Assembly (NCBI GenBank): GCA_002269645.1
Contig: NIVC01002487.1
Location: 1-64,000, forward strand
DNA: 64,000 bases
Direction of reading: 5' to 3'
DNA from: Macrostomum lignano
Taxonomy: Eukaryota
The translations under genes were made by a program, and so were the position numbers. How positions within the stretch are numbered: position 1 is the first letter of the stretch; every line of letters starts with the position of its first letter. A model generated the notes under the pieces. It searched no databases. It worked only from the letters and a program-made list of their open reading frames with translations, and was not told the origin of the DNA. Below are positions 3,596 through 49,514 of this stretch, one piece after another.

Positions 3596-3630
<35 letters not shown>

Positions 3631-24408: not shown

Positions 24409-24474
<66 letters not shown>

Positions 24475-24517
24475 GTGTCGTGTCTGTGTGTCTGTCTGTC
24501 TGTCTGTCTGTCTGTAG

Positions 24518-24615
<98 letters not shown>

Positions 24616-24654
24616 GTGTCGTTTCTGTGTGTCTGTCTGTCTGTCTGTCTGTAG

Positions 24655-24709
<55 letters not shown>

Positions 24710-24740
24710 AGAGTGTCTGTCTGTCTATCTGTCTGTCTGT
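24247..24740. repeat. (TCTG)n microsatellite
   Basis: Long interrupted TCTG run. Confidence 0.95.
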
Positions 24741-25082
24741 GTAACTAGCTGGCTGCTATTAGGAACGGCTAGTTTGATTGTGCGTCTCAAAATTGCTCAT
24801 AGAGTTCCACTCGAGATGGCCTCAGGCATGCTCAATTTTCTTCACTTGGGAGTTCGCAGGTGCTCAAGAAATGTTTCATTAACTCAAGCCTTCAAAAGGC
24901 TCGAACTAGTTTGCTTACAAGCGTACTTACAACGTACTTCCCTTACTTTCTCTGATCCGTTAAAATCGACTCATCTTCTCCGAGGTCTAATTAACCTGCC
25001 TTGATTCATTCTATAAGACTCTGTCGAATCTTTTTTCACAAATTTTCAGATTTTTTTGATTAGACCAACATGTCCTAATGGT

Positions 25083-25641: not shown

Positions 25642-28746
<3,105 letters not shown>

Positions 28747-28859
28747 TTGATTCGATACTGCAGTTTGATGTACGAGCTACCGTTTACAGTTGTGGACTTG
28801 GTGTAGGGTTGCGGAAGGGTCTGGACTGTTTTGCGATCCTGTTTATCTCCTCTATTAGC

Positions 28860-29865
28860 TTTGTGTCCCTGTCTGTCCCTGTCTGTCCCTGTCTGTCTGT
28901 CCCTGTCTGCCTTTGTCTGTCCCTGCCTGTCCCTGCCTGTCTTTGTCTGTCCCTGTCTGTCTTTGTCTGTCCCTGCCTGTCTTTGTCTTTGTCTGTCCCT
29001 GCCTGTCCCTGCCTGTCTTTGTCTGTCCCTGTCTGTCTTTGTCTGTCCCTGTCTGTCTTTGTCTGTCCCTGCCTGTCTTTGTCTGTCCCTGTCTGCCTTT
29101 GTCTGTCCCTGCCTGTCCCTGCCTGTCTTTGTCTGTCCCTGTCTGTCTTTGTCTGTCCCTGCCTGTCTTTGTCTGTCCCTGTCTGCCTTTGTCTGTCCCT
29201 GCCTGTCCCTGCCTGTCTTTGTCTGTCCCTGCCTGTCTTTGTCTGTCCCTGCCTGTCTTTATCTGTCCCTGCCTGTCTTTGTCTGTCCCTGTCTTTGTCT
29301 GTCCCTGTCTGTCTTTGTATGTCCCTGTCTGCCTTTGTCTGTCCCTGCCTGTCCCTGCCTGTCTGTCTGTCCCTGCCTGTCTTTGTCTGTCCCTGTCTGT
29401 CTTTGTCTGTCCCTGTCTGTCTTTGTATGTCCCTGTCTGCCTTTGTCTGTCCCTGCCTGTCCCTGCCTGTCTTTGTCTGTCCCTGCCTGTCTTTGTCTGT
29501 CCCTGTCTGTCTTTGTATGTCCCTGCCTGTCTTTGTCTGTCCATGTCTGTCTTTGTATGTCCCTGTCTGCCTTTGTCTGTCCCTGCCTGTCTTTATCTGT
29601 CCCTGCCTGTCTTTGTCTGTCCCTGTCTTTGTCTGTCCCTGTCTTTGTCTGTCCCTGTCTGCCTTTGTATGTCCCTGTCTGCCTTTGTCTGTCCCTGCCT
29701 GTCTTTATCTGTCCCTGCCTGTCTTTGTCTGTCCCTGTCTTTGTCTGTCCCTGCCTGTCTTTGTCTGTCCCTGCCTGTCTTTATCTGTCCCTGTCTGTCT
29801 TTTTCTGTCTCGTGTCTGTCTCTGTCTGTCCCTGTCTGTCTTTGCCTGTCCCTATCTGTCAGTGT
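28860..29865. repeat. Compound CTGT/CCCTGT/CTTTGT simple-sequence satellite
   Basis: Pyrimidine-rich low-complexity tract just after the stop of the two-TM gene. Confidence 0.93.
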
Positions 29866-31539
29866 CCTCTGTTCTGTTCCCTCTTCTATCTTCTCCCCCT
29901 GTACCTTCCCAGTTTTCTCCCACTGCATGGCAGTGACTTATTGTTTAACCCCGGTCACATCCCCCAGCAAAACATGTAACGAACTGCAGGCGCACAGTCA
30001 GCGAGAGGTTCGCTTCACCTCAGCCATGCATAATGCACGGTTGGTGAAGAAATTTCTGCCGTGTTTTACGACCTCCAAAGCTGTTATTATGGCCGCTGCA
30101 CCGCGATCGGGAGTCGGTTACGCATTAGTTAATAATAAATCAGACATTGTTAACATGAGCACAGCGGCTTGTTCCATGGGCTCTGGCTAAACGGGCTCAG
30201 TGACAGACGGGATGCTGCCCGTGGGCCAACTAAAATAAGCCAGAAGCTAAGGACGTTGTAAAATTAGTTATCGAGATTTCGGAAATTTTCAGTTCCTTTT
30301 TTAGCATTACGAAGCCGAACTGCCTATAGCTTCACCTTATTAAACTTCTGAATTGTAAACTGAAGAACTGTGTGTTTTGTCAGCCTATTTGCAAGTTCAG
30401 TTCACGGTGAGATGTGTTCTAGTTATTGTTAAATAAAACAGCAATTTCTGTCAACATTTTGCAGCAACAATCCGGACTTCACAGCTATGAAAGCCAAACC
30501 CCTCCAAGGCACTGCATGGTGCTGTGTGACGATATCTGATTTGCTTTGCATCAAACCTTTGCATCAAAGAGCCGAATGCTCAGTTCAAGTAAGGAATGTA
30601 AAAGGCAGCACGAGCTGATAACTTGATTGCTCAATTGTTTGATCTCAGCACGCACGCAAACTCAGTCTCTGAGCTGTCTGGCTCATGTCATGTCCTCACG
30701 TCTAAATATGGCCGGATGTTTTGGCACTGCATTGGCGCACTGCTTTGTTGTCAAAAATAGCTTTCGAACCTGTAAATCTAAACTCTATCTGATCCAAATT
30801 TTATCGATTTAATAAATTTTAAACTTTGAGCAGTGAGTTGTGGGATCTCAGCTCTAGGCAGGTATGCTGACTGCTTCAACTTGAAGCGTAAACTATAATG
30901 AGACGTGGCATCTGAGCAGGTGCATTGCGGGCGCCTCAACTTTGCGAAGATGCGCTCTGTATGACTATAATTTAGCAATTTTCCTAGGGAATTGCTGCTC
31001 GCTTGTTGTTGTTTTTCCTGAATAGCAATGGCTCCGGCTATTGTCAGAAAATTTTGCAGTCGGCCTCCCTCGCTTCTGCCTTCTGTATGTAGCGTTTCGT
31101 ATAATTACAGTCACAGACTGTTTGAGCGCAGGTAAGACTCGAAGTTCTGCCTATAATTAACATTCTGTCAAACAGAATTTCAGACTGTCTTGAGAAATTT
31201 TCTTCGAATTGATGCCGACAACTACAAGATCGAATTCAAATTTTAATCTGACTGAGTGGCATCTTGTCACTCGAGAATTGTTTTGAGTAGGACGAGGCTG
31301 CAGAGCTTCATTCAGACTGAGTGCAGATTGGTTGGGCTTATTTGCATTTTCGGCAGAACAGTAGTATATGCTAATTAAGTTGTTGAGCAGTGGGCGCTGA
31401 GAAACCGTAGTCTGAATAACCGCTGATAAAGATTCATTAAGGAAAAAGGAGGTAGCCTAAGTATACATAATCAAACTTCGAACTAAGGACCACTGGAAGT
31501 TACCGTTACAATATACAACACCACAGTGTTATCTTGTAT

Positions 31540-32200
31540 ATTGGAAACCTGCGGTGCTTCTTAGAAAACCCAATGGTACATCTAGAAAGCATTTATAGGT
31601 TTCTTAAAAGAAACTCACGAAGTTTCTTAGAAATCAAGTGAAACCTTACCAAAACCCGGTGATATCTCTTCAACTGTCTACGATGCTTCTTAGAAAACCC
31701 AGCATATTTCTTAGAAATCCTTAGATACTTCATTGAAACCCGATGATGCTTTTTTGTAAGAAGGCCCAAGATACTGCATCGAAACCTCGGGATTATTCGT
31801 GAAAAGTTAGCGATTATTTTTTAACGGGATATTATTTCATAGAAAACCTACCGATATTTCTTAGAAATCATGCGGATACTTTATCACAAGACCGACGATC
31901 GTATCTCTTAGCAGGCATATAATGCGTTTTAAAGAACTGTGGAACTTTTGTAATAAATCCACTATTATTCTTAGAAATCATAATAACGTCATTAAAAATC
32001 GACGGTCTCTTAGAAAGCCAATTAAAATTCTTAGAAAAACTTATGTTCTAAGTTTAACGTTTTTCCTCAGAAAACCCGAGTCGTTTCTTAGAAACGATTT
32101 TCTAAGAATCGTGGATTTTCTCTCAGAAATCCCTAGTAGAAAACTCTAAAATATGTTTTGATAAATCCTACCTAATTTTTTTAAAAGATCAAGACTTTTT
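31540..32200. repeat. Highly degenerate repeat region seeded with TTCTTAGAAA
   Basis: TTCTTAGAAA or TTTCTAAGAA recurs at irregular spacing. Confidence 0.55.
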
Positions 32201-33149
32201 TAAAATATGAGCGTTTATAAGTTTTCCTAAACTTAAAAAATCTGGATTAATAGGATACTATATAGTCAGAATATTTTCTGTGAATCCTGTGCAAAACCTG
32301 CGACAGTCTCTTTGCCTAATTTAGTAATAGAAAATACGAGCCACCTTCGATCCCAGTCCCAGATCTCAATCCCCATTGGTCAGGGCCACGCCTTGCTGAC
32401 AATTATATCTATCAGCTAGTCTCTCTATAAAAAGCATGCAAGAAAATCTCGCTTTAGAGACGCCGACTCTTGACAGTACAAGACAAAATCTGAGCAATCG
32501 TTGCGCGGTTACTGAATTCTCGATCTTTACCCAACATAATCCTGTGAACCATTTTCTTATTGGTAAGTGTGACAAGGCGGATTGATTTAGAACTTTTGCA
32601 TATGCTTTTGTGTCTCTTCTGGAGCGATGAAGCATATTACTTGTATCTGTCTGCTTATTTTCAAATTCTGATCCGTATTGATTGACAGAGTCTGGGAAAG
32701 AAACAGAAGCGGTTTAAACGCTCAAATCAATGGCCATTATCCGGGGGGGGGGATTACAGAGGGGACCAGCTGCCACAAGTGCAATGGACAGGCCGGTCCG
32801 GCCCTTCTTGTTGCTTCTAGTTATTTTTCTTGCATCAATTTCTTGCAGTTGAGTTTGGCCTGAGCCGCTTGCAGAACCAGCTTAAAAGTAAAAAATTTTG
32901 CCCAGATATGCTTTAAACATTATTGGAACAGTTACCAACTATGTAAGAAACTTTTTGTTTCTCAGCTGAGTGCTGTGAAGCTCGTGGCTTTGTTTAGCGT
33001 TTTGTTATCGAAGTTTTTCTCAGATTTTTAGCTACAGTACACTTGAAATTTTACGCTTCGTTTACATGAATTCGGTGGGTGTCTGAAAGGATGCAAAATG
33101 CAAGAAAAACATGGAGTCCTTTAAAAGAAGAATTGAAAATCAATTGGGG

Positions 33150-33516
33150 TTGTCGGCACATCAAAGGACTTGAAATCAATGGGAGGGTGTCGGCACATCA
33201 AAGGAAGGACTTGAAATTAATGGGGGTTGTCGGCACATTAAAGGAAGGACTTGAAATCAATGGGGGTTGTCGGCCCTTCAAAGGAAGGACTTGAAATCAA
33301 TGGGGGGTTGTCGGCACTTCAAAGAAAGGACCTGAAATCAATGGGGGGGGGTTGTAGGCACTTCAAAGAAAGGACCTGAAATCAATGGGGGGTTGTAGGC
33401 ACTTCAAAGAAAGGACCTGAAATCAATGGGGGGGTTGTAGGCACTTCAAAGAAAGGACCTGAAATCAATGGGGGGGTTGTAGGCACTTCAAAGAAAGGAC
33501 CTGAAATCAATGGGGG
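33150..33516. repeat. ~41-42-bp tandem repeat (GAAATCAATGGGGGGGTTGTAGGCACTTCAAAGAAAGGACCT)
   Basis: About 9 copies immediately upstream of the second prohormone. Confidence 0.9.
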
Positions 33517-33589
33517 TAGGTGGCCTTAAGAGTCACAAACTTACGCTTGCACTATGCTTTCGTTGATGCAGGATCTGAACTTTGCAAGA

Positions 33590-34428
33590 ATGCTCGGTCA
33601 GCAACACAAAAGCGGCACGGGATGCGTCATCATGATTGCTTGTTTTCTCATCATGAGCTTTATCTCAGCTACCTGTCTGGCTCTGCCTCAGCAGAGTCGA
33701 GATGGCGCTTCGAACGTAGTCGACTTTGAAAACGAGGGCGACTTCTCGGACGCTGCTAGCTCTGTTCCGACTGACGACCAGTTCGAGCGCGTGAGTAAAT
33801 AGTTTACTTACTCAGGTGGGTTCGTAGAGAGCCTCTAATACGAGCGTCTTATACGTGCATCATCGTAGATTTACAAAACAGGCGAGAGCCTAAACTCTCT
33901 AAAGGTCCGATCGTGGAGAGCCCCGATTTTTTGGGAGACTCGTAGGAGTCCAAAACTTTTGGAGGCTTCGTCGAGAGCTTTTGTTGCAGCTATTAGAGAT
34001 GTTTATAGATAGAGAGCCTCAACGCGTAGAAAGATTCGTCTTGCAAAGAAGTAGGAGCCTAAATAAGGTCTACATAAATGTAAGAGCGTCGAGAGCCTCA
34101 AAGTAAATGGAGAGTGAAAATTCTGTCTGTCGATTTTTCGAAAATCTCCTGAAATCTCCGTAATTCCATTACGATGAGAGCCTCAACTCTTCAAACAGTT
34201 CGTAGGGAGCCTCAACTCTAGGGCCTTTGGTACGTAAAATAGCAAGAAACATAAGAAGCCAATTCAATAATCCGATTCCAGCGTCGTGAGCTGATGCAGA
34301 AGATTCGCAGCTTCCTGCTCCATCATCGGGGCCAATCGCCGAGCAATCAGGAGCTGCGGAAGCGCCACTCTGGCACAATGTCAATGAAGAAGATTCGGAC
34401 GATGTTCGACATGCTTCGCACCGGTTGA
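33590..34428 (+). CDS. Two-exon neuropeptide prohormone yielding a predicted amidated peptide HSGTMSMKKIRTMFDMLRT-NH2
   Basis: Exon 33590-33790 encodes a signal peptide (MLGQQHKSGTGCVIMIACFLIMSFISATCLA) and an acidic pro-region, ending CGC|GTGAGT. Exon 34282-34428 (TTCCAG|CGT) reads RRELMQKIRSFLLHHRGQSPSNQELRKRHSGTMSMKKIRTMFDMLRTG-stop. Total 115 aa; an upstream in-frame ATG at 33554 is an alternative start. Confidence 0.82.
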
Positions 34429-34754
34429 GATTGAGAACATCTATCAAATAGTCGAGGCTCTACTCAATTATTGATCGTCTAATTGGCAAACAGATTTTTA
34501 ACTAACCTTCGTGTTGCTTGCTGACAGCTATTTTATTAACCATCCTCGCTAGCTCCGTCTCGCTTAAACTTAGACCAGCGTATCCATAGCGACTGTAGAA
34601 GCTGAGTAATGTTCAACTTTAGACAGAAAAATAAACCCGTGTACTGGCGATTTAGCTTTGCCATGTTGTAGGCCCCGAGTCGGGAACCTATTGCCTCACT
34701 TCAGTTGAGCATTCACTGATTTTTTCTTTTGACTACAACGGAGGTCACTACAAG

Positions 34755-35030
34755 GAGGTCAAGAGTGTCACACAGAAGTCACCCAAGAGTGTCACACAGA
34801 AGTCACTCAAGAGTATCACATAGAAGTCACTCGCGAGTGTCACACAGAAGTCACTCAAGAGTGTCACATAGAAGTCACTCGCGAGTGTCACACAGAAGTC
34901 ACCCAAGAGTGTCACACAGAAGTCACTCGCGAGTGTCACACAGAAGTCACCCAAGAGTGCCACACAAAAGTCACTCAAGAGTGTCACACAGAAGTCACTC
35001 AAGAGTGGCACACAGAAGTTACTCAAGAGT
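34755..35030. repeat. 24-bp tandem repeat (AAGAGTGTCACACAGAAGTCACTC)
   Basis: About 11 copies. Confidence 0.9.
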
Positions 35031-35934
35031 GTCAAGTAGGCCCTAATCAAGTCAAAGTAATTTCCTACATGTACTGCAATCATATTGACTTCATATTTTC
35101 CAGAATCTTCCCTCAAACACAATAGCCATTTGCGTCAGACTGAGGTCTAACCGAACAGATAATGACAGACAATGCGACACAAAACGCAAAGGCAGCCTGA
35201 GAGACAAGGGCGAAAAAATCAAGAAAACCCAATTATGTGATTTTTGCTTTTTGCTTAACTGCATGTTTATTAAAGGATAGAATTCTGTCAGGTAGGGGAA
35301 GTCAAGGCGCAAAAACTAGACAAATTGTAGTGCGCGTGCACACTTCTACCGTATTAGCGTTGAAGATCTACCTTCTGAAAAAGAAACTAGATTTCGTAAA
35401 AACAGCACTTTTCATTCCGGAAAATTACCCTATCTAAATTTTATCGAAACATTTTCTGGATTCCAAATTCAAAGCAATAAAAAGTCTATATATTTTTTCT
35501 ACCAAAAAATACGTGAAACGCTATCACTTAATCGCTTGTTGAGAGGACATGCGCTTTTAAAGGGCTGTCTATTACAGCACTAGCGTAATAATAGAACCCA
35601 AGGCAAAGTTAATTAGCTATATTCCTTTGCAACGACTGTCATCGCAAAAAAGTATTCACTTTTTTCAGAGATTTTCTTCTTGCGTCTTCCGGTTCAGTAG
35701 GCCGAACCAGACTTCATTATTCTGCCTTGGATTGTGTTGGGCACGACTGGAATGCGAAGAAATTATCGTTATAAATTACGGATTCTTGTGATAATAAATT
35801 TCTGTTATAACCATGCCCTTCTTCTATTACTATCAGTAGAAACTTTGCGAATGACTTAAATAGAACGCGACTATAGAAGCCTGTTTAAATAGGACTGTAT
35901 GAAAAGAACAGTTAGACATGACAAGCTACATAGT

Positions 35935-36958
35935 GAAGGTGAGAAGCTACCTGTTAGGGACATGAGAAAGCCACCAGTTAGAGACATGAGAAGCTACCTG
36001 TTAGAGACATGAGAAGCTACCTGTTAGAGACATGAGTAGCTACCTGTTAGAGACATGAGAAGATACCTGTTAGAGACATAAGAAGCCACCTGTTAGAGAC
36101 ATGAGAAGCTACCTGTTAGAGACATGAGCAGCTACCTGTTCGCGACATGAGAAGCTACCTGTTAGAGACATGAGAAGCCACCTGTTAGAGACATGAGAAG
36201 CCACCTGTTAGGGATATGAAAAGCCACCTGTTAGAGACATGAGCAGCTACCTGTTAGAGACATGAAAAGCTACCTGCTAGAGACATGAGAAAGCCACCAG
36301 TTAGAGACATGAGAAGCTACCTGTTAGAGACATGAGAAGCTACCTGTTAGAGACATGAGTAGCTACCTGTTAGAGACATGAGAAGATACCTGTTAGAGAC
36401 ATAAGAAGCCACCTGTTAGAGACATGAGAAGCTACCTGTTAGAGACATGAGCAGCTACCTGTTCGCGACATGAGAAGCTACCTGTTAGAGACATGAGAAG
36501 CCACCTGTTAGAGACATGAGAAGCCACCTGTTAGGGATATGAAAAGCCACCTGTTAGAGACATGAGCAGCTACCTGTTAGAGACATGAAAAGCTACCTGC
36601 TAGAGACATGAGAAGCTACCTGTTAGAGACACGAGAAGCTACCTGCTAGAGACATGAGAAGCTACCTGCTAGAGACATGAGAAGCTACCTGTTAGAGACA
36701 TGAGAAGCTACCTGTTAGAGACATGAGAAGCTACCTGCTAGAGACATGAGAAGCTACCTGCTAGAGACATGAGAAGCTACCTGTTAGAGACATGAGAAGC
36801 TACCTGCTAGAGACATGAGAAGCTACCTGCTAGAGACATGAGAAGCTACCTGTTAGAGACATGAGAAGCTACCTGTTAGAGACATGAGAAGCTACCTGCT
36901 AGAGACATGAGAAGCCTGCTAGAGACATGAGAAGCTACCTGCTAGAGACATGAGAACC
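35935..36958. repeat. 23-bp tandem repeat (GAGACATGAGAAGCTACCTGTTA)
   Basis: About 44 copies. Variant units recur about 323 bp apart (CGCGAC variant at 36141 and 36464). Confidence 0.93.
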
Positions 36959-37048
36959 TTTCCTGTTAGACACACTGACTAAGCTACCCTGAAGCAGTTG
37001 GTTATGAATGCATGGGCCTGATCTAACCCCTTAACCACAGCTCCCCCC

Positions 37049-40000
37049 TCAGCTCACGCGGTGCGGGCTGCCTATCTTCGAACCAGTACTTGGTTCCAGT
37101 TTTGGCACGTTGCAGCGCCTGCGATCTGTACAAATCGCCTCGGCTGGCGGAGCCCAGAGGGATTCCGGCGGCGTTGCGCGGCTGCACCTTTGGTGCCAGG
37201 CGGCTGTTGACGCTGAGGCCGCCGAACCCGGCAGCTCCCGGGTAGCCGTGCGGAGGAAAGCGGCGACAGTCATCCTCCTTGACGTTGCCTGGTCGGGGGG
37301 GAAGGGGGTAGTTGCTGCTGAAACTGTGACTTTTTGCTACTAATAGTAGTTGCCCATTTTAATTAGATTCGATAAATATGCTGAAAAATTCCAGTGTAAA
37401 AAGTCAGGTTTCGGTGTCAGAAGTCAGATTTCAGTGTCCAAGGTTAGATATCAGTGTCAGAAGTCAGATGTCAGTGTCAGAAGTCAGATATCAGTGTCAG
37501 AAGTCAGATATCAGTGTCAGAAGTCAGATGTCAGTGTCAGAAGTCAGATGTCAGTGTCAGAAGTCAGATGTCAGTGTCAGAAGTCAAATGTCAGTGTCAG
37601 AAGTCAGATGTCAGTGTCAGAAGTCAGATGTCAGTGTCAGAAGTCAGATGTCAGTGTAAGAAGTCAGATGTCAGTGTCAGAAGTCGGTGTCGGTGTCAGA
37701 AGTCAGATGTCGGTGTCAGAAGTCAGGTGTCGGTGTCAGAAGTCAGATGTCGGTGTCAGAAGTCAGGTATCAGTGTCAGAAGTCAGGTGTCGGTGTCAAA
37801 GGTCAGATACAGTGTCAGAAGTCAGGTGTCGGTGTCAGAAGTCAGGTGTCGGTGTCAAAGGTCAGATACAGTGTCAGAAGTCAGGTGTCGGTGTCAGAAG
37901 TCAGGTGTCGGTGTCAAAGGTCAGATTTCAGTGTCAGAAGTCAGATGTCAGTGTCAGAAGTCAGATGTCGGTGTCAGAAGTCAGGTATCGGTGTCAGAGG
38001 TCTGATGTCAGTGTCAAAGGTCAGATTTCAGTGTCAGAAGTCAGATGTCAGTGTCAGAAGTCAGATGTCGGTGTCAGAGGTCTGATGTCAGTGTCAAAGG
38101 TCAGATTTCAGTGTCAGAAGTCAGATGTCGGTGTCAGAGGTCAGGTATCGGTGTCAAAGGTCAGATACAGTGTCAGAAGTCAGGTGTCGGTGTCAGAAGT
38201 CAGGTGTCGGTGTCAAAGGTCAGATTTCAGTGTCAGAAGTCAGATGTCAGTGTCAGAAGTCAGATGTCGGTGTCAGAGGTCAGGTATCGGTGTCAGAGGT
38301 CTGATGTCAGTGTCAAAGGTCAGATGTCGGTGTCAGAAGTCAGATGTCAGTGTCAGAAGTCAGATGTCGGTGTCAGAGGTCTGATGTCAGTGTCAAAGGT
38401 CAGATGTCAGTGTCAGAAGTCAGATGTCGGTGTCAGAGGTCAGATTTCAGTGTCAGAAGTCAGATGTCGGTGTCAGAGGTCAGATTTCAGTGTCAGAAGT
38501 CAGATGTCGGTGTCAGAGGTCAGATTTCAGTGTCATCTTTTCATATCTTCGCACACAAACCCGGTAGGTAGAGGCAGCGCCACTCACCGTCGATAAACAT
38601 GATATTGTTGCCCAAATTGCCGGTGCACTGCCGCACGTGTCGCCAGCAGCTGCCGTTACGACCCGAACGAAACACCGGCGATCCATCCAGTGGATGCGCC
38701 TGCTGCTGCGAGCGCGACTGCGACAGCGCCGGCTCAAGGAGGCGCAGCTGAGCCGGGTCCAGCACCGGCAGGGTCTGGTAGCCGGGCAGTTGCCATGGAG
38801 ACAAGAGCACGAATGGCTGCTGCTGCTGCTTCTGTCCGTTGCCAGCAGTCGGTCCGCTCTGAACTCCAGGCACATAGTAGGGGTAGAAAAGGGCGCCACC
38901 GCCTGACGCCAGGCCGCCCGGCTGATCAGCTTCGGTGCTCTGGCCGGCGCTGACACCCATGGCCGGCGGCAGGGCCGCGTCGGTCTACGTTTAATTAATT
39001 ATTATAGTGGGGATTAACTACTTAGTAAAATGAGTTTATTAGTAGTATAAAAGAGTTTAATTCACTAAATATTATGGTTACCTAATTTGATTTTTGAAAT
39101 TCAGATATGTGAATATGCTGCTGGTTGAACTCTCGACTTACAGAGAATTTTTAGAATCCGGATAATTATCGAAGAGAGAGAGAGAGTTAGGAAATCCAGG
39201 TGATTATCGAATAGCGACTTAAATTCTCACCGAAAAAACCCAAGGAATCGAAAACTAGAAAATCATCAGAAGATCCGCTTCTCATCACACCCTACCTGAA
39301 TCTCCATATTTCTCTTCATCGCGCTGGGCGCCCGCCGGATGGGCACGTACTGCGGCCAGCAGGAGGCGTCCGCGGTGGATCTCAGCGACATCTGGGATCC
39401 GGATCTGGAGTGGGGAAAAGTGCAACACGATGACTCAGCAACAGCTTACTGCTAGCAGAGGGTGCGGGATATACCATGCCAGCGGCCCAGGCTCGATTCC
39501 AAGTGCAGTCGCATTAATTTAGGGCTAAATTGGAATCTCGGCTTGGCTCTGCTCGTGCAATTAACGGCCTTGAGGGCCAACCCCCCAAGGCACAGTGAAG
39601 TGTACATGACTGACGATTAAAAAGTCAGTGGGCAGCTGTACACCTTGTGTGAGCGCGTGTATGAGAGTGCCTGCTGGTTAAATAAATTCAAAACCCAATC
39701 CAACTCATTAAGCGAAGTGAAAGTCTAGACTGCAGCTATGGACCTCTGTTTGAGCAATGCCGTGTTTAAACAAAAACTGTCTACGAAATTGGAGCTGCAT
39801 GGTCTCAGAACTAAAGTGCAATATTCTAAGCTAGAGGCAGGATTCAATGTAGGATTCCAGGAAATCTTTGAGATAGAAGCGCAACTTTACAACTCAATAT
39901 TCACTGTCGGCGCTTACACTATTAAGACACTTAGCGCTTGCATTTCTAAGACAGTTGAAGCTTACATTTCTAAGACAGTTGATGCTTGCATTTCTAAGAC

Positions 40001-41771
40001 AGTTGATGCTTACATTTCTAAGACAGTTGATGCTTGTATTTCTAAGACAGTTGAAGCTTACATTTCTAAGACAGTTGATGCTTACATTTCTAAGACAGTT
40101 GATGCTTGCATTTCTAAGACAGTTGAAGCTTACATTTCTAAGACACTTAGCGCCTGCATTTCTAAGAAAATTGCTGCTAATTATATTACTAAGATAGTTG
40201 CTGCTTACATTTCTAAGACAGTTGACGCTTACATTTCTAACACAGTTGACGCTTACATTTCTACCACAGTTGACGCTTACATTTCTACCACAGTTGACGC
40301 TTACATTTCTAAGACAGTTGACGCTTACATTTCTACCACAGTTGACGCTTACATTTCTACCACAGTTGACGCTTACATTTCTAAGACACTTAGCGCCTGC
40401 ATTTTTAAGAAAATTGCTGCTAATTATATTACTAAGATAGTTGCTGCTTACATTTCTAAGACAGTTGACGCTTACATTTTTAAAACAGTTGACGCTTACA
40501 TTTCTAAGACAGTTGACGCTTACATTTCTACCACAGTTGACGCTTACATTTCTAAGACAGTTGACGCTTACATTTCTAAGACAGTTGACGCTTACATTTC
40601 TACCACAGTTGACGCTTACATTTCTAAGACAGTTGACGCTTACATTTCTAAGACAGTTGAAGCTTACATTTCTAAGACACTTAGCGCCTGCATTTCTAAG
40701 AAAATTGCTGCTAATTATATTACTAAGATAGTTGCTGCTTACATTTCTAAGACAGTTGACGCTTACATTTCTACCACAGTTGACGCTTACATTTCTACCA
40801 CAGTTGACGCTTACATTTCTACCACAGTTGACGCTTACATTTCTAAGACAGTTGACGCTTACATTTCTACCACAGTTGACGCTTACATTTCTACCACAGT
40901 TGACGCTTACATTTCTAAGACACTTAGCGCCTGCATTTTTAAGAAAATTGCTGCTAATTATATTACTAAGATAGTTGCTGCTTACATTTCTAAGACAGTT
41001 GACGCTTACATTTTTAAAACAGTTGACGCTTACATTTCTAAGACAGTTGACGCTTACATTTCTACCACAGTTGACGCTTACATTTCTAAGACAGTTGACG
41101 CTTACATTTCTAAGACAGTTGACGCTTACATTTCTAAGACAGTTGACGCTTACATTTCTAAAACAGTTGACGCTTACATTTCTAAAACAGTTGACGCTTA
41201 CATTTCTAAATCAGTTGACGCTTACATTTCTAAAACAGTTGACGCTTACATTTCTAAAACAGTTGACGCTTACATTTTTAAAACAGTTGACGCTTACATT
41301 TCTAAAACAGTTGACGCTTACATTTCTAAGACAGTTGACGCTTACATTTCTACCACAGTTGATGCTTGCATTTCTAAGACAGTTGAAGCTTACACTACTA
41401 GGACAGTTGACGCTTACATTTCTAAGACAGTTGACGCTTACATTTCTACCACAGTTGACGCTTACATTTCTAAGACAGTTGATGCTTACACTACTAGGAC
41501 AGTTGATGCTTACATTTCTAAGACAGTTGATGCTTACATTTCTAAGACACTTGGCGCTTACACTTCTAAGACACTTAGCGCTTACATTTCTAAGACAGTC
41601 GGTGCTTACAATTCTAAGATAATTGACGCTTACTTATCTAAGACAGTTGACTTAAGACCAAATCAACTGTACATGCATTTACCTTCTCGGCAGCCCGCCA
41701 GCCTCAGTTCGCTGCTGCAAGCCAACTCCACTCGGGCCGGCAGTTTTCGGCCGTTGAATTCCACTGCTCAT
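37049..41771 (-). CDS. Orphan 4-exon protein (~287 aa, low complexity, G/P/Q-rich)
   Basis: GC-rich exons 41771-41683, 39404-39296, 38984-38588 and 37317-37049 have GT-AG borders with compatible phases (2, 0, 1). The product reads MSSGIQRPK...CWPQYVPIRRAPSAMKRNMEIQTD...FYPYYVPG...IMFID.... No family was recognised. Confidence 0.55.
37400..38533. repeat. 20-bp intronic tandem repeat (TCAGTGTCAGAAGTCAGATG)
   Basis: About 55 copies filling nearly the whole intron. Confidence 0.95.
39465..39680 (+). mobile_element. Partial copy of SINE family 2
   Basis: Near-identical to 57840-58010 (GCTCGATTCCAA...TTGGAATCTCGGCTTGGCTCTGCTCGTGCAATTAACGGCCTTGAG...GTGAAGTGTACATG). A further fragment lies at about 55570-55680. 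Confidence 0.8.
39930..41650. repeat. 24-bp intronic tandem repeat (ACAGTTGACGCTTACATTTCTAAG) with higher-order structure
   Basis: About 70 units. A divergent block recurs at 40141, 40384, 40675 and 40918. Confidence 0.95.
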
Positions 41772-42481
41772 GCCTTTTTCGAGAATTATTCCAGTTAGGT
41801 TAATTAGACTAATTAGTCCTCTAAGCACTGCTCTATATATCAGCTTATAATTTTATCTACGGCTACTGCTACGGCTACGGCAGGTTTTAGGGACAGCAGA
41901 GCTTCAGAAGAAAACGGTCCTCAGAATTTAGTGCCAGTCAGAGCTAGGGGCATGATGAAGGAGAAACTGGGAGAGAGGCGGAGAGAGAGGGACTGTAAAC
42001 TGCACAGAGTTTAAGAAGTATATCTGATAGCTAGACAAAAAAGAACAATAGAAACCTATGCTTGCTGCAAGGGGGGTTAATTCTTTGCATGGAGCCTAGG
42101 CGAGAGAGCGGAATGACAATATGACGGTTTGTCGGTTTTCATTCGAGCTACCTGCAGTTGCTGGGCAGAGCTGGGAGGGGAGGTGGGTTGGCGTCACAGA
42201 GCGGCAGGTTAGGTCCTAAGCAACAGGCCTGAGAAAATATGAAAATTAAGATACTGACTGCCCGATGAAGCTGCATTTTAACTGTCTTGTCAATGTACTC
42301 TGTACTCTGCTTCGCTCAACATTTTAAGCAGGTGCAATTTTATCTCAACGGTGAGAAACAGTGCAGGCTCAAATTCGTTAACACGTATTGATGAGGCCAA
42401 GAAGTTCTGCAGCTAAAGAAGTGAATTTAGAATTTTGTCTGCTAAACTGGGTGCATTTCAACGTCAGTCGATTTAATAATG

Positions 42482-44797: not shown

Positions 44798-45024
44798 TCA
44801 ATCCACAGTAGAATACTGTAGCTGTTGTAATTCTTCAACTAGGCCACCAATCGCAGTGGACACATCGTCCGCGGCATGGAACAGATGCCGCACTGGGTCT
44901 TGCTGTTGATGCTGTTGTTGCTGTTGTTGCTGATGTTGCTGATGATGTTGATGATGCATAATTTGCAAACTATGGTAAGGATGCTGCTGCTGCTGTTGCT
45001 GGGCATAATAATGAGGATATTGTG

Positions 45025-45056
<32 letters not shown>

Positions 45057-48000
45057 ATGTTTGGCAGAGCTGCTGGCACCGAACGCGAGGCGGCCGCGGC
45101 AGACTGAGCCCGATAATAGGTATCGGCCATAGACAGTCTGGCCATCAGCTGTTCAAGCTGCTGCATAAGATCTCGCCTGGACTCCTGCAGACGGCCCATC
45201 CTGTCCTCAAGTTGATCTTTGCGCTGTCTGAGATGTCGCAACTCGCCAAGGAGGCTGTTCTGATTTATGATCAGCTGATCCTGGCTGTGACTCTGCTGTT
45301 CCCGCAGCTGAGCCGACTGCAATTTTAACTGTTCAATCTCTGCAAGCATGCGTTCGTTTTGACGTTCCAAGTCGCGAATTTTGCGCTCCTGAGCTCGCGC
45401 CTGCGCCAGATCGGCAGCCGAAGCGGCTAAAGCGGCCGCGCCGCCATCGCCGCCAATGGCGCCGACTGGAAAAGCGCCGGAATTGGCGCCGGCTGCGCCA
45501 TTTAATTGTAGAGCGGCCGCGTACCTTGAGGGTTGGCGCCGAGGGATGCTTCATCAGAAAAGGACGTCTGTTTTCTAAGAATGGCGTCTATTTCTAAGAA
45601 TGGCGTCTATTTCTAAGAATGGCGTCTGTTTCTAAGAATCACGTCTGTTTCTAAGAATCACGTCTGCTTCTAAGAATCACGTCTGTTTATAAGAATTACG
45701 TATGTTTCTAAGAATGACGTCTGTTTCTATGAGTGACGTCTTTTTTCTAAGAATCATGTCTGTTTCTAAGAGTGACGTCGGTTTTCTAAGAATGACGCCT
45801 GTTTCTAAGAATGACGCCTGTTTCTAAGAATAACGCCTGTTTCTAAGAATAACGCCTGTTTCTAAGAATCACCTGTTTCTTAGAATCACGTCTGCTTCTA
45901 AGAATGATGTCTATTTTCTAAGAATTACGTCTGTTTTTAGAAACGACGTCTATTTCTAGGAATGACACCTGTTTTCTAAGAATAAAGCTTAGTTCTTAAA
46001 ATTAACTCCAGTTTTAAGAACATTTTTAGTACAAAACTTTCTAATAATATTGTAGCTGTTTTTAAAACAACGAATTTTTTTAAAAAAAGAAACGACTTGC
46101 TCTACTTAAAAAAGCTTTAATTTTTGTTGATATTAAACCTTCAAAAAGAGACTCAGGTTGGTCTTCAAGAAACACGGTCAAGAAGAGAGTAATTTTTGAC
46201 TCCCTACCTGGCAATTAACCGATGTTCGTCATCCAATCGCTGTTGCTGCTGTTGCTGTTGCTGCTGCCCAGACACAAAGGCATTCGTAGTCACAGTCAGT
46301 GCGCCAGTAGCGAGACTTGCTGGAGCCCACGCGTTAATCCCTGGCTGCTGCTGGTGCTGCTGATGCTGCACTGCTTGCAAAGCGAGCCCATCCGACATCA
46401 TTGGCTGAGCTATTGAAGCCGCAGAAAAAGGCGCAATACTAACAGAAGCAGCTGTAGCAGCAATTGATGGCATTGCTGAAGTCCCACCGTCAACATGCTG
46501 CAGACTGTGCGACAGCTGGGTGAGCTTGCCGGGTCTGCCCAGGCTGCCTCCTGCGGGTGGTTGTGGGGGGGGGGAGGCCCCGGGTTCGATTCCTCGTTAA
46601 TTTCGAAGGACCCGGGCTCGATACCAGATATGGCGTAAGAGGACCCAGGTTTGATTCCGGGTAGGGTGTCAGAGGGCCCGGGTTTGATTCCAGGTAGGGT
46701 GTCAGAGGGCCCGGGTTTGATTCCAGGTAGGGTGTCAGAGGGCCCGGGTTCGATTCCAGGTATGGTGTCAGAGGACCCGGGTTCGATTCCAGGTAGGGTG
46801 TCAGAGGGCCCGGGTTTGATTCCAGGTATGGTGTCAGAGGGCCCGGGTTCGATTCCAGGTATGGTGTCAGAGGACCCGGGTTCGATTCCAGGTAGGGTGT
46901 CAGAGGGCCCGGGTTCGATTCCAGGTATAGTGTCAGAGGACCCGGGTTTGATTCCAGGTAGGGTGTCAGAGGACCCGGGTTTGATTCCAGGTAGGGTGTC
47001 AGAGGGCCCGGGTTCGATTCCAGGTAGGGTGTCAGAGGACCCGGGTTCGATTCCAGGTATGGTGTCAGAGGACCCGGGTTTGATTCCGGGTAGGGTGTCA
47101 GAGGGCCCGGGTTTGATTCCGGGTATAGTGTCAGAGGACCCGGGTTCGATTCCAGGTAGGGTGTCAGAGGACCCGGGTTTGATTCCAGGTAGGGTGTCAG
47201 AGGGCCCGGGTTCGATTCCAGGTAGGGTGTCAGAGGACCCGGGTTCGATTCCAGGTATGGTGTCGGAGGACTCGGGTTCGATTCCAGGTAGGGTGTCAGA
47301 GGGCCCGGGTTCGATTCCAGGTATGGTGTCAGAGGACCCGGGTTCGATTCCAGGTATGGTGTCAGAGGACCCGGGTTCGATTCCAGGTAGGGTGTCAGAG
47401 GACCCGGGTTCGATTCCAGGTATGGTGTCAGAGGACCCGGGTTTGATTCCGGGTAGGGTGTCAGAGGGCCCGGGTTTGATTCCAGGTATAGTGTCAGAGG
47501 ACCCGGGTTCGATTCCAGGTATGGTGTCAGAGGACCCGGGTTTGATTCCAGGTAGGGTGTCAGAGGGCCCGGGTTCGATTCCAGGTAGGGTGTCAGAGGG
47601 CCCGGGTTCGATTCCAGGTAGGGTGTCAGAGGACCCGGGTTTGATTCCGGGTAGGGTGTCAGAGGACCCGGGTTTGATTCCGGGTATGGTGTCAGAGGGT
47701 CCGGGTTTGATTCCAGGTATGGTGTCAGAGGACCCGGGTTCGATTCCAGGTATGGTGTCAGAGGACCCGGGTTTGATTCCGGGTATGGTGTCAGAGGACC
47801 CGGGTTTGATTCCAGGTAGGGTGTCGGAGGGCCCGGGTTCGATTCCAGGTAGGGTGTCAGAGGACCCGGGTTCGATTCCAGGTAGGGTGTCAGAGGGCCC
47901 GGGTTCGATTCCAGGTAGGGTGTCAGAGGGCCCGGGTTCGATTCCAGGTAGGGTGTCAGAGGACCCGGGTTCGATTCCAGGTATGGTGTCAGAGGACCCG

Positions 48001-49514
48001 GGTTCGATTCCAGGTAGGGTGTCAGAGGGCCCGGGTTCGATTCCAGGTAGGGTGTCAGAGGACCCGGGTTCGATTCCAGGTAGGGTGTCAGAGGGCCCGG
48101 GTTCGATTCCAGGTAGGGTGTCAGAGGACCCGGGTTCGATTCCAGGTAGGGTGTCAGAGGGCCCGGGTTCGATTCCAGGTAGGGTGTCAGAGGGCCCGGG
48201 TTCGATTCCAGGTAGGGTATCAGAGGACTAGTTTTAAACTTAGAAAATCTGATGTAACTAAGGAAAATAGGAGAGGGTGCATCAGTCTATATCTGCACTT
48301 TATTATTGACAGTACTTGGATTGCATTAGAGCACAGTCTTAGACTATGCATACATACATATAATGCATATGCATGGTTCTCAATTTTCACCCAAAACTAT
48401 AAAAGCAAACGCCCAGCAAAGTCAAGCATTCGTAATGAAATCAAGGAGAGACAGGGGGTGAGAGAGGAATTCGGAGAAATTCAATTTACTGCAACTCTGA
48501 GCGACACTGCCACAACCGCAGCCATGGGGCTAACAAATCACTTTTTTTAGAGACTGTGCACCGCTTCATTAGCCCTTTGGGACAGGGCGATTGACAGTAA
48601 ATAGTGCATTTTAGCTGCGGGATGGATAGAGTACCTCATAACTCATAGTTATCCCGAATCTCCCAGATCCCCTCCTAGCCATCCAAATCTCCCAGATCCC
48701 TTCATAGTCATCCCAAATCTCCCAGATTCCCTTCTAGTCATCCCAAATCTCCCATATTCCCTTCTAGTCATCCCAAATCTCCCAGATTCCCTTCTAGTCA
48801 TCCCAAATCTCCCAGATCCCCTCCTAGCCATCCAAATCTCTCCCCTTCTAGTCATCCCAAATCTCCCAGATTCCCTTCTAGTCATCCCAAATCTCCCAGA
48901 TTCCCTTCTAGTCATCCCAAATCTCCCAGATTCCCTTCTAGTCATCCCAAATCTCCCAGATTCCCTTCTAGTCATCCTAAATCTCCCAGATCCCCTCCTA
49001 GCCATCCAAATCTCCCGAATCCCCTCCTAGTCATCCCGAATCTCCCGAATCCCCTCCTAGTCATCCCAAATCTCCCAGATCCCCTTATAGCCATCCGAAA
49101 TCTCCCAGATCCCCTCCTAGCCATCCCAAATCTCCCAGATCCCCTTCTAGTCATCCGAAATCTCCCGAATCCCCTTATAGTCATCCGAAATCTCCCGAAT
49201 CCCCTTATAGTCATCCCAAATCTCCCAGATCCCCTTATAGTCATCCCAAATCTCCCAGATCCCCTTATAGTCATCCCAAATCTCCCAGATCCCCTTATAG
49301 TCATCCGAAATCTCCCGAATCCCCTTATAGTCATCCGAAATCTCCCGAATCCCCTTATAGTCATCCCAAATCTCCCAGATCCCTCTCCATCAGCCTCACC
49401 AGTGGCAGTCAGACTCTGGTTCATTGACGCGGGCGGAGGCGGAGGCGGCACAATGTGAGTCAGGTCAAGCATCGGGCCGCTGTCCTGTGGATCCAACAGC
49501 GCCGCGGCCGTCGT

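What the first reader, a model, noticed from the sequence alone, without database searches (positions are those of the whole stretch)
33590..34428. Hidden two-exon prohormone for an amidated 19-mer, HSGTMSMKKIRTMFDMLRT-NH2
Seen: exon 1 (signal peptide plus acidic spacer) ends at a consensus donor CGC|GTGAGT. A phase-0 acceptor at 34281 opens 48 codons ending RKR-HSGTMSMKKIRTMFDMLRT-G-stop. This exon is absent from the ORF track. Established: basic site + peptide + Gly + stop is the signature of PAM/PHM amidation. Inference: an amphipathic helical peptide with an HS N-terminus, loosely like class B GPCR ligands. An internal KK could release IRTMFDMLRT-NH2, and ELMQKIRSFLLHHRGQSPSNQEL could be a second product. 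I could not assign a family.
Basis: partly seen in the sequence, partly recalled or inferred. Interest (0 to 1): 0.78.

Follow-up and report, generated by a model that had tools for sequence, protein, structure and literature searches.

The report
Orphan amidated-peptide precursor gene, Macrostomum
A small two-exon gene of the flatworm Macrostomum lignano, already in GenBank as an RNA-derived "hypothetical protein", most likely encodes a secreted precursor of an amidated signalling peptide, but its family, processing and function are still unproven.

Summary
Exon 1 (33590-33790) ends at CGC|GTGAGT. Exon 2 (34282-34428) follows an AG and ends RKR-HSGTMSMKKIRTMFDMLRT-G-stop.

It is not hidden. 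The window is Macrostomum lignano Mlig_3_7 contig NIVC01002487.1:1-64000. GenBank annotates exactly this 115-aa two-exon CDS at 33590-34428 (BOX15_Mlig009841). That annotation comes only from RNA-seq and transcript assemblies, so the splice junction has indirect RNA support. There are three copies, 98-100% identical. Codon usage and the GC contrast between exons and intron support real coding exons.

The prohormone reading is plausible but inferred. The protein has a hydrophobic signal-like N-terminus, an acidic spacer, two tribasic sites and a terminal Gly. The "dibasic...Gly-stop" tail alone is not enriched over chance.

No family could be assigned:
- Nothing but the gene's own copies matched in 1.84 billion representative proteins.
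- Pfam gave no hit.
- UniProt's automatic name "CRF domain-containing protein" failed every profile test I ran.
- The glucagon/secretin model (class B ligands) gave no hit.
- Amphipathicity is weak.
- A resemblance to annelid PDF, in architecture and in the best BLASTP match (E=0.34), is suggestive but unproven.

Verdict: an ordinary, already annotated orphan prohormone candidate of modest interest.

The parts
33558..33571 (+). Splice-acceptor-like tract TTTCGTTGATGCAG, 18 nt upstream of the ATG. Possibly a spliced-leader trans-splice site or the 5' boundary of the mRNA.
   Evidence: Sequence. The annotated CDS starts at 33590 although in-frame ATGs exist at 33554 and 33566. That fits a transcript whose 5' end lies downstream of them. 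38.8% of M. lignano genes are trans-spliced (PMC5730564). This is inference, not shown.
33590..33682 (+). Predicted signal peptide, residues 1-31 (MLGQQHKSGTGCVIMIACFLIMSFISATCLA), with predicted cleavage before LPQQ.
   Evidence: The h-region at residues 12-31 has mean Kyte-Doolittle 2.49, with C at -3 and A at -1. AlphaFold2 predicts a helix at 10-30. This is a heuristic only; no SignalP was available.
33683..33787 (+). Acidic spacer, residues 32-66 (LPQQSRDGASNVVDFENEGDFSDAASSVPTDDQFE).
   Evidence: The stretch counted, residues 32-67 (it includes R67 of the RRR site), has 9 D+E against 2 K+R. It is low-confidence and non-helical in the AlphaFold2 model: pLDDT <50 at residues 32-51, no helix before residue 62.
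33590..33790 (+). Coding exon 1 (67 codons), ending CGC before the GTGAGT donor.
   Evidence: Codon log-likelihood is best in frame 0 (+0.234 against -0.316 and -0.249).
33791..34281 (+). Intron, 491 nt, GTGAGT...CCAG.
   Evidence: Codon log-likelihood is negative in all frames (-0.43 to -0.51), and GC is 43% against 55% in the CDS. Removing it gives exactly the annotated protein P0002.
34282..34428 (+). Coding exon 2 (48 codons plus TGA).
   Evidence: Frame 0 codon log-likelihood is +0.340. This exon is 100% identical in all three genomic copies.
33788..34287 (+). Tribasic site R67-R68-R69, split by the intron (CGC | CGT CGT). Predicted prohormone-convertase site.
   Evidence: Cleavage is inferred.
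34288..34356 (+). Intervening 23-mer ELMQKIRSFLLHHRGQSPSNQEL (residues 70-92), a possible second product or associated peptide.
   Evidence: AlphaFold2 predicts a helix over residues 62-82. There is no significant amphipathicity.
34357..34365 (+). Tribasic site R93-K94-R95.
   Evidence: Cleavage is inferred.
34366..34422 (+). Predicted mature 19-mer HSGTMSMKKIRTMFDMLRT (residues 96-114).
   Evidence: The helix is predicted only for M102-T114. Calculated monoisotopic mass, if amidated, is 2269.1316 Da.
34423..34428 (+). Gly115 (putative amide donor) followed by the TGA stop.
34630..34635 (+). First plus-strand AATAAA downstream of the stop (202 nt after it), a candidate poly(A) signal.
   Evidence: L002 4041-4046, which is window 34630-34635. 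The hexamer is not enriched over chance, so this is inference.

Best explanation
This is a genuine, transcribed, spliced protein-coding gene of Macrostomum lignano (Mlig009841). It is present in three near-identical copies in this neopolyploid genome. It encodes a 115-aa secretory prepropeptide.

Most likely route (inferred):
1. The signal peptide is removed after Ala31.
2. Prohormone convertases cut at the tribasic sites RRR (67-69) and RKR (93-95).
3. A carboxypeptidase trims the basic residues.
4. The C-terminal Gly115 is converted by the amidating enzymes.
5. The products are HSGTMSMKKIRTMFDMLRT-NH2, the 23-mer ELMQKIRSFLLHHRGQSPSNQEL and an acidic N-terminal propeptide.

The amidated peptide would act as a lineage-restricted neuropeptide or peptide hormone on an unknown receptor.

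Shown: the gene, its splice junction (via the RNA-derived annotation), its coding character and its sequence architecture. Inferred: secretion, cleavage, amidation, neuronal expression and signalling function.
For: - The exact spliced product equals GenBank PAA57451.1/PAA82544.1, annotated at 33590-34428 of NIVC01002487.1, which is the window.
- That annotation was built only from RNA-seq (StringTie/TACO), a de novo transcriptome and TransDecoder ORFs (PMC5730564).
- Codon log-likelihood is +0.278 in frame 0, against -0.255 and -0.042 in the other frames. Both exons are individually best in frame 0, and the intron is negative in all frames. CDS GC is 55% against 43% in the intron. GC3 is 0.66, similar to or slightly above the window's confident coding exons (0.51-0.65).
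- The ORF is intact in all three copies. The only amino-acid changes (C18S, F19L) lie in the signal h-region, and exon 2 is invariant.
- The N-terminus is signal-like, the spacer is acidic, and two tribasic sites bracket the peptides.
- The full composite signature is unique in the window.
- M. lignano is reported to encode amidated neuropeptides (predicted GLLamide precursor in the PMC6425005 supplement; PMC3503879).
Against: - There is no homologue outside the species' own copies: none in 1.84 billion representatives, none in 5.8 billion clusters, and no Pfam family. Conservation of the Gly-stop and cleavage sites is therefore untested.
- The three copies are 98-100% identical in intron and exons alike. 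Exons have 3/696 substitutions against 12/982 in the intron (Fisher p=0.12), so purifying selection is not demonstrated.
- The Gly-stop tail is as common as chance predicts, and the full composite appears in about 10% of simulated windows.
- At 115 aa the ORF is only just above what I recall (not checked here) as TransDecoder's 100-aa default minimum.
- No expression-site or peptidomic data were found.
Confidence: 0.55

Rival explanations
1. The whole exon-2 product after RRR, ELMQKIRSFLLHHRGQSPSNQELRKRHSGTMSMKKIRTMFDMLRT-NH2 (45 aa), stays intact and is a divergent CRF/DH44/ELH-type hormone. This is what UniProt's automatic name 'CRF domain-containing protein' implies.
For: - UniProt names A0A1I8HJI8 a CRF domain-containing protein.
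- A length of 45 aa lies within the family's range: the 44 members I collected run from 26 to 46 aa once the C-terminal Gly is removed.
- The peptide would be C-terminally amidated, like the family.
- Family members tolerate internal basic clusters, for example the oyster DH44 ...EAHRKRF....
- Pfam's CRF model also misses a genuine lophotrochozoan DH44, so a Pfam miss alone is weak evidence against membership.
Against: - Three HMMs were tested: 35 lophotrochozoan DH44/ELH peptides, 9 Pfam-verified vertebrate/insect CRF/DH peptides, and both combined. They score the peptide at -0.7, 0.5 and 1.8 bits. Of 5000 shuffles, 4468, 550 and 1141 score at least as well.
- hhalign, local and global, gives probability <1%, and 16-62 of 200 shuffles do as well.
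- There is no [LI]-S-[LIV] N-terminal motif and no hydrophobic C-terminal amide.
- AlphaFold2 predicts three short helices with breaks, not one long helix.
- RKR is a strong consensus cleavage site.
Confidence: 0.07
2. The 19-mer is a divergent PDF/cerebrin-type peptide, and the gene is the flatworm counterpart of the PDF precursor. Its target would be a PDF-receptor-like class B GPCR.
For: - The precursor plan matches Platynereis Pdf (90 aa, sequence confirmed): signal peptide, helical associated peptide, basic site, then one 17-19-residue amidated peptide at the extreme C-terminus.
- The best BLASTP match between the two precursors is exactly that region: KRHSGTMSMKKIRTMFDMLRTG against KRNPGTLD--AVLDMPDLMSLG, 7/22 identities.
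- Shuffle tests give p=0.02-0.05 for the C-terminal halves and the mature peptides. That is similar to the p=0.05 obtained for recalled Platynereis versus Drosophila PDF.
- The only secretin-type GPCR of Fasciola hepatica is PDF-receptor-like (PMC6114109).
- No pdf orthologue was recognisable in the planarian Schmidtea (PMC3890597).
Against: - BLASTP E=0.34 is for a single comparison, and I picked that comparison post hoc.
- Whole propeptides give p=0.27.
- There is no hit to Pfam Pigment_DH.
- There is no similarity to arthropod or nematode PDFs (p=0.12-0.77).
- A 2-residue indel is needed, the conserved Pro of the L/M-P-D-L motif is Phe here, and the peptide is strongly basic whereas PDFs are acidic or neutral.
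Confidence: 0.1
3. It is a small secreted protein or peptide with a non-neuronal role, such as a gland, seminal-fluid, adhesive or antimicrobial product. The terminal Gly and the basic clusters would then be incidental.
For: - The signal-like N-terminus and the cationic C-terminal half (net charge +7 over 45 aa) fit many secreted effector peptides.
- The Gly-stop tail is a chance-level pattern.
- The gene has no homologues and is lineage-restricted, which is typical of fast-evolving secreted proteins.
Against: - Two tribasic sites placed exactly so as to release peptides of 23 and 19 residues, with Gly as the last residue, form the canonical prohormone layout.
- There are no cysteines after the signal peptide and no repeats.
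Confidence: 0.18
4. The transcript is real but the ORF is not translated. It would be a chance ORF in a non-coding or UTR-like RNA that TransDecoder accepted.
For: - At 115 aa the ORF is only just above what I recall (not checked here) as the 100-aa default minimum.
- There are no homologues.
- The composite signature arises in about 1 in 10 simulated windows.
- Exon conservation is not significantly greater than intron conservation.
Against: - Frame-specific codon usage resembles that of the neighbouring genes.
- There is a sharp exon/intron contrast in GC and coding potential exactly at the proposed boundaries.
- The ORF is intact in three copies, and exon 2 is invariant.
Confidence: 0.1

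Closest known systems
PDF/cerebrin precursors of lophotrochozoans (e.g. Platynereis dumerilii Pdf, UniProt G8Z9G4)
   Same: A small precursor (90 aa against 115 aa) with a signal peptide and a helical associated peptide. One amidated peptide of 17-19 residues sits at the very C-terminus after a basic site. The best local alignment covers exactly this peptide (7/22 identities).
   Different: The similarity is not significant (E=0.34). The peptide is basic rather than acidic, lacks the conserved Pro, needs a 2-residue gap, and ends Gly-stop rather than Gly-Arg-Lys. There is no Pfam Pigment_DH hit.
CRF / DH44 / egg-laying hormone family (Pfam PF00473, PF02323)
   Same: UniProt's automatic label. 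If RKR is not cut, the product is a 45-residue C-terminally amidated peptide released after a basic site, which is within the family's length range.
   Different: There is no profile similarity above shuffles. The N-terminal L-S-I/V motif and the hydrophobic amidated C-terminus are missing. The predicted helix is interrupted.
Orphan flatworm prohormones (planarian spp/npp genes, Collins et al. 2010, PMC2953531)
   Same: Short, lineage-restricted precursors with a signal peptide and basic cleavage sites, often giving amidated products, and without homologues outside flatworms.
   Different: None of six 4-5-residue words of the peptide region that I searched (KIRT, KIRS, DMLR, LRTG, FDML, RKRHS) occurs in the supplementary files of that paper held as text. 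There is no peptidomic or expression evidence for the Macrostomum gene.
Glucagon/secretin/VIP/PACAP peptides (Pfam PF00123 Hormone_2)
   Same: A His-Ser N-terminus and a helical, basic C-terminal part.
   Different: Only two residues are shared. At 19 aa the peptide is shorter than the 27 or more I recall for that family. Pfam gives no hit even at E<=10.

Membership tests
Generic neuropeptide/peptide-hormone precursor (convertase, carboxypeptidase and amidating-enzyme route) | N-terminal signal peptide | tested here: met
   Heuristic only. The h-region is 20 residues with mean Kyte-Doolittle 2.49, and C and A sit at -3/-1 before LPQQ. AlphaFold2 predicts a helix at 10-30. SignalP was not available.
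Generic neuropeptide/peptide-hormone precursor (convertase, carboxypeptidase and amidating-enzyme route) | Peptides flanked by di- or tribasic cleavage sites | tested here: met
   RRR (67-69) and RKR (93-95) bracket a 23-mer and a 19-mer.
Generic neuropeptide/peptide-hormone precursor (convertase, carboxypeptidase and amidating-enzyme route) | C-terminal Gly available as amide donor | tested here: met
   Gly115 is followed directly by TGA. The pattern is not enriched over chance: 39 in the window against 44.8 +/- 6.9 simulated.
Generic neuropeptide/peptide-hormone precursor (convertase, carboxypeptidase and amidating-enzyme route) | Transcribed and spliced as proposed | tested here: met
   Indirect. 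The product is identical to a CDS from an annotation built solely on RNA-seq and transcript assemblies. The reads themselves were not inspected.
Generic neuropeptide/peptide-hormone precursor (convertase, carboxypeptidase and amidating-enzyme route) | Conservation of cleavage sites and Gly in related species | not testable with these tools
   No other Macrostomum sequences are in the searchable collections. The three M. lignano copies are too similar to be informative.
Generic neuropeptide/peptide-hormone precursor (convertase, carboxypeptidase and amidating-enzyme route) | Mature peptide detected; expression in neurons or endocrine cells | not testable with these tools
   The gene id and the peptide strings are absent from the searchable literature and from the supplements I checked.
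CRF/DH44/ELH | Significant match to family profiles | tested here: not met
   There is no Pfam CRF or ELH hit at E<=10. My own HMMs score it at -0.7, 0.5 and 1.8 bits, within the shuffle distribution. hhalign gives probability <1%.
CRF/DH44/ELH | N-terminal [LI]-S-[LIV] motif with a following L..L helix, and a hydrophobic amidated C-terminus | tested here: not met
   The peptide starts ELMQKIRS and ends LRT-Gly. Compare the family alignment.
CRF/DH44/ELH | Amidated peptide within the family's length range | tested here: inconclusive
   The product is 45 aa only if the RKR site is left uncut. The 44 collected members run from 26 to 46 aa without the terminal Gly.
PDF/cerebrin | Match to Pfam Pigment_DH (PF06324) | tested here: not met
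   No hit. However, the model also missed my recalled lophotrochozoan and nematode PDFs, so the test has little power.
PDF/cerebrin | Precursor with a single amidated peptide of about 18 residues at the extreme C-terminus after a basic site | tested here: met
   Compared with the Platynereis Pdf precursor from PMC3890597 Additional file 7, confirmed as UniRef G8Z9G4.
PDF/cerebrin | Sequence similarity of the mature peptide to lophotrochozoan PDF | tested here: inconclusive
   BLASTP gives 7/22 identities, E=0.34. Shuffle tests give p=0.02-0.05 for the C-terminal halves and 0.27 for whole propeptides. The comparison was chosen post hoc.
PDF/cerebrin | Activates a PDF-type class B receptor | not testable with these tools
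   Needs a receptor assay. A PDFR-like receptor exists in at least one flatworm (PMC6114109).
Glucagon/secretin/VIP (Hormone_2) | Match to Pfam PF00123 | tested here: not met
   No Pfam family was found at E<=10 for the precursor, exon 2 or the 19-mer.

The most novel reading that the evidence does not exclude
The 19-mer amide is the missing flatworm ligand of the PDF-receptor-like class B GPCRs, that is, a highly divergent basic PDF/cerebrin-type peptide. That would place PDF signalling in Platyhelminthes, where no ligand had been recognised in the papers I could read.
Probability: 0.1. Interest if true: 0.55.

Novelty: new member of a known kind. Interest (0 to 1): 0.3.

Why it matters
If the prediction holds, M. 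lignano gains one more candidate neuropeptide. The species is a transgenic, regenerating flatworm model, and the candidate comes with a concrete, synthesisable sequence and a mass to look for. The report also shows that UniProt's automatic "CRF domain" name for this protein is not backed by profile comparison. If the weak PDF resemblance turned out to be real, it would pair a ligand with the PDF-receptor-like class B GPCRs of flatworms. Otherwise this is one orphan prohormone among many, already present in public annotation.

Tried and rejected
- Homology searches. The word-indexed search of 5.8 billion clusters and a full phmmer scan of 1.84 billion representatives found only the gene's own copies. 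The PDB sequence search found nothing.
- Pfam on the precursor, exon 2 and the 19-mer gave no relevant family. The only hit was a spurious sub-threshold GIDA_C_1st match.
- The CRF/DH44/ELH hypothesis, prompted by UniProt's name, was rejected after HMM and hhalign tests against shuffles.
- The internal repeat MQKIRS/MKKIRT in exon 2 scores 21, and 20% of shuffles reach that, so I dropped it.
- Amphipathicity of the 19-mer, the 23-mer and the 45-mer is not significant.
- tblastn found no paralogues in the window or in the sister locus.
- None of the six 4-5-residue words of the peptide region that I searched occurs in the planarian prohormone supplements.
- The gene id Mlig009841 and the peptide strings were absent from the full-text library and from the supplements of two M. 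lignano expression papers. No M. lignano neuropeptide or cell atlas was found.
- A search with Platynereis Pdf to find bridging flatworm PDFs returned only the query itself.
- The selection test across the three copies is underpowered (p=0.12 and 0.08).
Full report
**What is in the sequence.**
- An ATG at 33590 opens 67 codons (MLGQQHKSGTGCVIMIACFLIMSFISATCLALPQQSRDGASNVVDFENEGDFSDAASSVPTDDQFER) that end with CGC at 33788-33790.
- GTGAGT follows at 33791.
- An AG at 34280-34281 precedes 48 codons (RRELMQKIRSFLLHHRGQSPSNQELRKRHSGTMSMKKIRTMFDMLRTG) and a TGA at 34426-34428.
- The junction is phase 0, and the spliced product is 115 aa.
- At a 30-aa cut-off the mechanical ORF list does show the tail as a 44-aa ATG ORF (34294-34428). 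It also shows exon 1 as part of an 82-aa ORF starting at an upstream in-frame ATG (33554-33802).

**Where the window comes from, and what is already annotated.**
- A search with the spliced protein returned one cluster: 'hypothetical protein BOX15_Mlig009841g1 [Macrostomum lignano]', 115 aa, 98% identical over its full length.
- The cluster's second member, P0002, is identical to the window's product residue for residue. It carries GenBank accessions PAA57451.1 and PAA82544.1 (BOX15_Mlig009841g3 and g2) and UniProt A0A1I8HJI8.
- P0002 is encoded on two contigs of assembly GCA_002269645.1 (Mlig_3_7). On NIVC01002487.1 the gene lies at record positions 33590-34428.
- That locus is base-identical to window 30590-37428. 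The window is therefore NIVC01002487.1:1-64000, and the 'hidden' gene is annotated at exactly the finding's coordinates.
- The GenBank annotation of Mlig_3_7 was derived only from RNA-seq-guided assemblies (StringTie, TACO), the de novo transcriptome MLRNA150904, experimentally defined trans-splice and poly(A) sites, and TransDecoder ORFs (PMC5730564). A CDS that needs removal of 33791-34281 therefore implies transcript support for this junction. I did not see the reads themselves.
- The three copies fit the known redundancy of this assembly. The window is collinear with the copy on NIVC01001526.1 over about 20 kb at 91-98% identity.

- Tails of the form dibasic, 5-40 residues, Gly-stop are as common as chance predicts: 39 observed against 44.8 +/- 6.9 in first-order Markov simulations.
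- The full composite is a signal-like ATG exon, a GTRAGT donor, an in-phase AG and such a tail within 3 kb. It occurs only at this locus, but 3 of 30 simulated windows also produced one. The pattern alone is therefore weak evidence.
- Coding potential is better evidence. I built a codon table from five confident coding ORFs of the window. With it the spliced CDS scores +0.278 bits per codon in frame 0, against -0.255 and -0.042 in the other frames.
- Each exon alone is best in frame 0, and the intron is negative in all frames (-0.43 to -0.51).
- GC is 55% in the CDS and 43% in the intron. GC3 is 0.66, similar to or slightly above the training exons at 0.51-0.65.
- Across the three copies the exons carry 3 substitutions in 696 compared positions, and the intron carries 12 in 982 plus 4 indel columns. 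Exon 2 carries none. These contrasts are not significant (p=0.12 and 0.08).
- The two amino-acid differences (C18S, F19L) lie in the hydrophobic core of the signal sequence.

**Architecture of the product.**
- Residues 12-31 form a 20-residue hydrophobic stretch (mean Kyte-Doolittle 2.49), with Cys and Ala at -3/-1 before LPQQ.
- Residues 32-67 have 9 acidic and 2 basic residues.
- R67-R68-R69 straddles the intron, and R93-K94-R95 precedes the 19-mer. Gly115 is the last residue.
- A single-sequence AlphaFold2 model (mean pLDDT 62.9) gives helices at 10-30, 62-82, 89-95 and 102-114, and a disordered spacer. Only M102-T114 of the 19-mer is helical.
- The hydrophobic moment of the 19-mer is 0.41, and 8.6% of shuffles reach it. 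The 23-mer and the 45-mer are unremarkable.
- An apparent internal repeat (MQKIRS/MKKIRT) is not significant (p=0.20).
- A splice-acceptor-like tract ends at 33571, 18 nt before the ATG. It would remove the two upstream in-frame ATGs, which fits the annotated start and M. lignano's frequent spliced-leader trans-splicing. This is inference.
- The first downstream AATAAA is at 34630-34635.

**Family assignment.**
- Nothing beyond the gene's own copies matched in 1.84 billion representative proteins or in the PDB. Pfam gave no family at E<=10.
- UniProt's automatic name, 'CRF domain-containing protein', suggested that the whole 45-residue exon-2 product might be a CRF/DH44/ELH-type hormone.
- To test this I took 35 lophotrochozoan DH44/ELH peptides from the supplement of PMC6425005. 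I added nine vertebrate and insect CRF/DH peptides, which I first verified as Pfam CRF hits (E 1e-13 to 1e-18).
- Three HMMs scored the Macrostomum peptide at -0.7, 0.5 and 1.8 bits. Of 5000 shuffles, 4468, 550 and 1141 did at least as well.
- hhalign, local and global, gave probabilities below 1%, and 16-62 of 200 shuffles did as well.
- The family's N-terminal L-S-I/V motif and its hydrophobic C-terminal amide are absent. I therefore do not file the gene under CRF.
- One caveat applies. Pfam's CRF model also misses a genuine mollusc DH44, so very divergent membership cannot be excluded by sequence alone.

**The PDF lead.**
- The precursor layout resembles PDF/cerebrin precursors. The Platynereis Pdf precursor (90 aa) comes from PMC3890597 Additional file 7 and was confirmed as UniRef G8Z9G4. 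It ends ...KR-NPGTLDAVLDMPDLMSL-G-RK.
- BLASTP's best match between the two precursors is KRHSGTMSMKKIRTMFDMLRTG against KRNPGTLD--AVLDMPDLMSLG, with 7/22 identities and E=0.34.
- Shuffle tests give p=0.02-0.05 for the C-terminal halves and mature peptides, but 0.27 for the whole propeptides.
- Arthropod and nematode PDFs show no similarity, and Pfam Pigment_DH does not hit.
- Context makes the lead worth noting. The only secretin-type GPCR of Fasciola hepatica is PDF-receptor-like (PMC6114109), and no pdf orthologue was recognised in Schmidtea (PMC3890597).
- The comparison was chosen post hoc and is not significant, so it stays a lead.

**Most likely mechanism, and rivals.**
- Best explanation (0.55). 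This is a real gene encoding a secretory prepropeptide. It is cut at RRR and RKR, trimmed, and amidated at Gly115 to give HSGTMSMKKIRTMFDMLRT-NH2 (2269.13 Da) plus a 23-mer. It would act as a lineage-restricted neuropeptide or hormone. The gene, the junction and the coding character are shown. Secretion, processing, amidation and function are inferred.
- Rival: a non-neuronal secreted peptide (0.18).
- Rival: a divergent PDF-type ligand (0.10). This is a special case of the best explanation.
- Rival: an untranslated chance ORF (0.10).
- Rival: an uncut 45-mer CRF-like hormone (0.07).
- I judge cleavage at the internal KK unlikely, from general knowledge that Lys-Lys before an aliphatic residue is rarely used. 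This was not tested.

**Novelty and verdict.** The gene is already public as a hypothetical protein. Neither its id nor its peptide sequences appear in the searchable literature. The prohormone reading therefore appears to be new annotation of a known kind of gene: a new member of a known kind, of modest interest.

Noticed in passing
window 1-64000: The window is the first 64 kb of Macrostomum lignano Mlig_3_7 contig NIVC01002487.1 (GCA_002269645.1). It is collinear at 91-98% identity with a second contig (NIVC01001526.1), and the gene also sits on a third (NIVC01000463.1). These are the duplicated copies expected in this neopolyploid genome.
   Followed up: yes
UniProt A0A1I8HJI8 (= the window's protein): UniProt's automatic name is 'CRF domain-containing protein'. 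Pfam's CRF model does not hit the protein, and my family profiles score it no better than shuffles. The label looks like a false positive from a permissive signature.
   Followed up: yes
window 33137-33516: A 41-bp tandem repeat (about 9.3 copies, consensus AAATCAATGGGGGGTTGTCGGCACTTCAAAGAAAGGACCTG) ends 74 nt upstream of the ATG at 33590. In pairwise alignments this repeat-bearing upstream flank is the part of the locus that differs most between the three copies; some of that difference may be misalignment within the repeats.
   Followed up: partly
window 34759-35034, 35940-36988, 37392-37998 and many others (e.g. 24471-25004, 28743-30190, 39738-41798, 46651-48231, 53759-54366): The window is full of minisatellites; the three measured here have 20-24-bp units. 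They generate long, repetitive, spurious ORFs in several frames. Most long ORFs in the mechanical list are of this kind.
   Followed up: partly
window 35104-35280: A second 'dibasic...Gly-stop' open stretch has an AG in phase with the same 33790 donor. The annotated CDS does not use it. It illustrates how easily such tails arise by chance.
   Followed up: partly
window 55732-56643 (-) and 44798-45370 (-): A dystrobrevin/dystrophin-like gene. One large exon carries EF-hand_2, EF-hand_3 and ZZ zinc-finger domains (Pfam E 1e-21, 7e-13, 1e-10). A downstream exon is coiled-coil and poly-Q rich. It probably corresponds to the 771-aa product annotated on the sister contig.
   Followed up: partly
window 60375-60908 (+) and 61672-62538 (+): A PP2C-type protein phosphatase exon (Pfam PP2C, E 6e-34), followed by a low-complexity Ala/Gln/Ser-rich C-terminal exon.
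   Followed up: no
window 1956-3755 (+): A 599-aa ORF that is extremely Gln/Pro/Ser-rich and internally repetitive, ending in a long poly-Q run. It may be a real low-complexity protein or a repeat artefact.
   Followed up: no
Pfam PF00473 (CRF) and PF06324 (Pigment_DH): Both models recognise vertebrate or arthropod members strongly. They missed a published mollusc DH44 peptide and my recalled lophotrochozoan and nematode PDFs. Negative Pfam results therefore say little for spiralian neuropeptides.
   Followed up: partly
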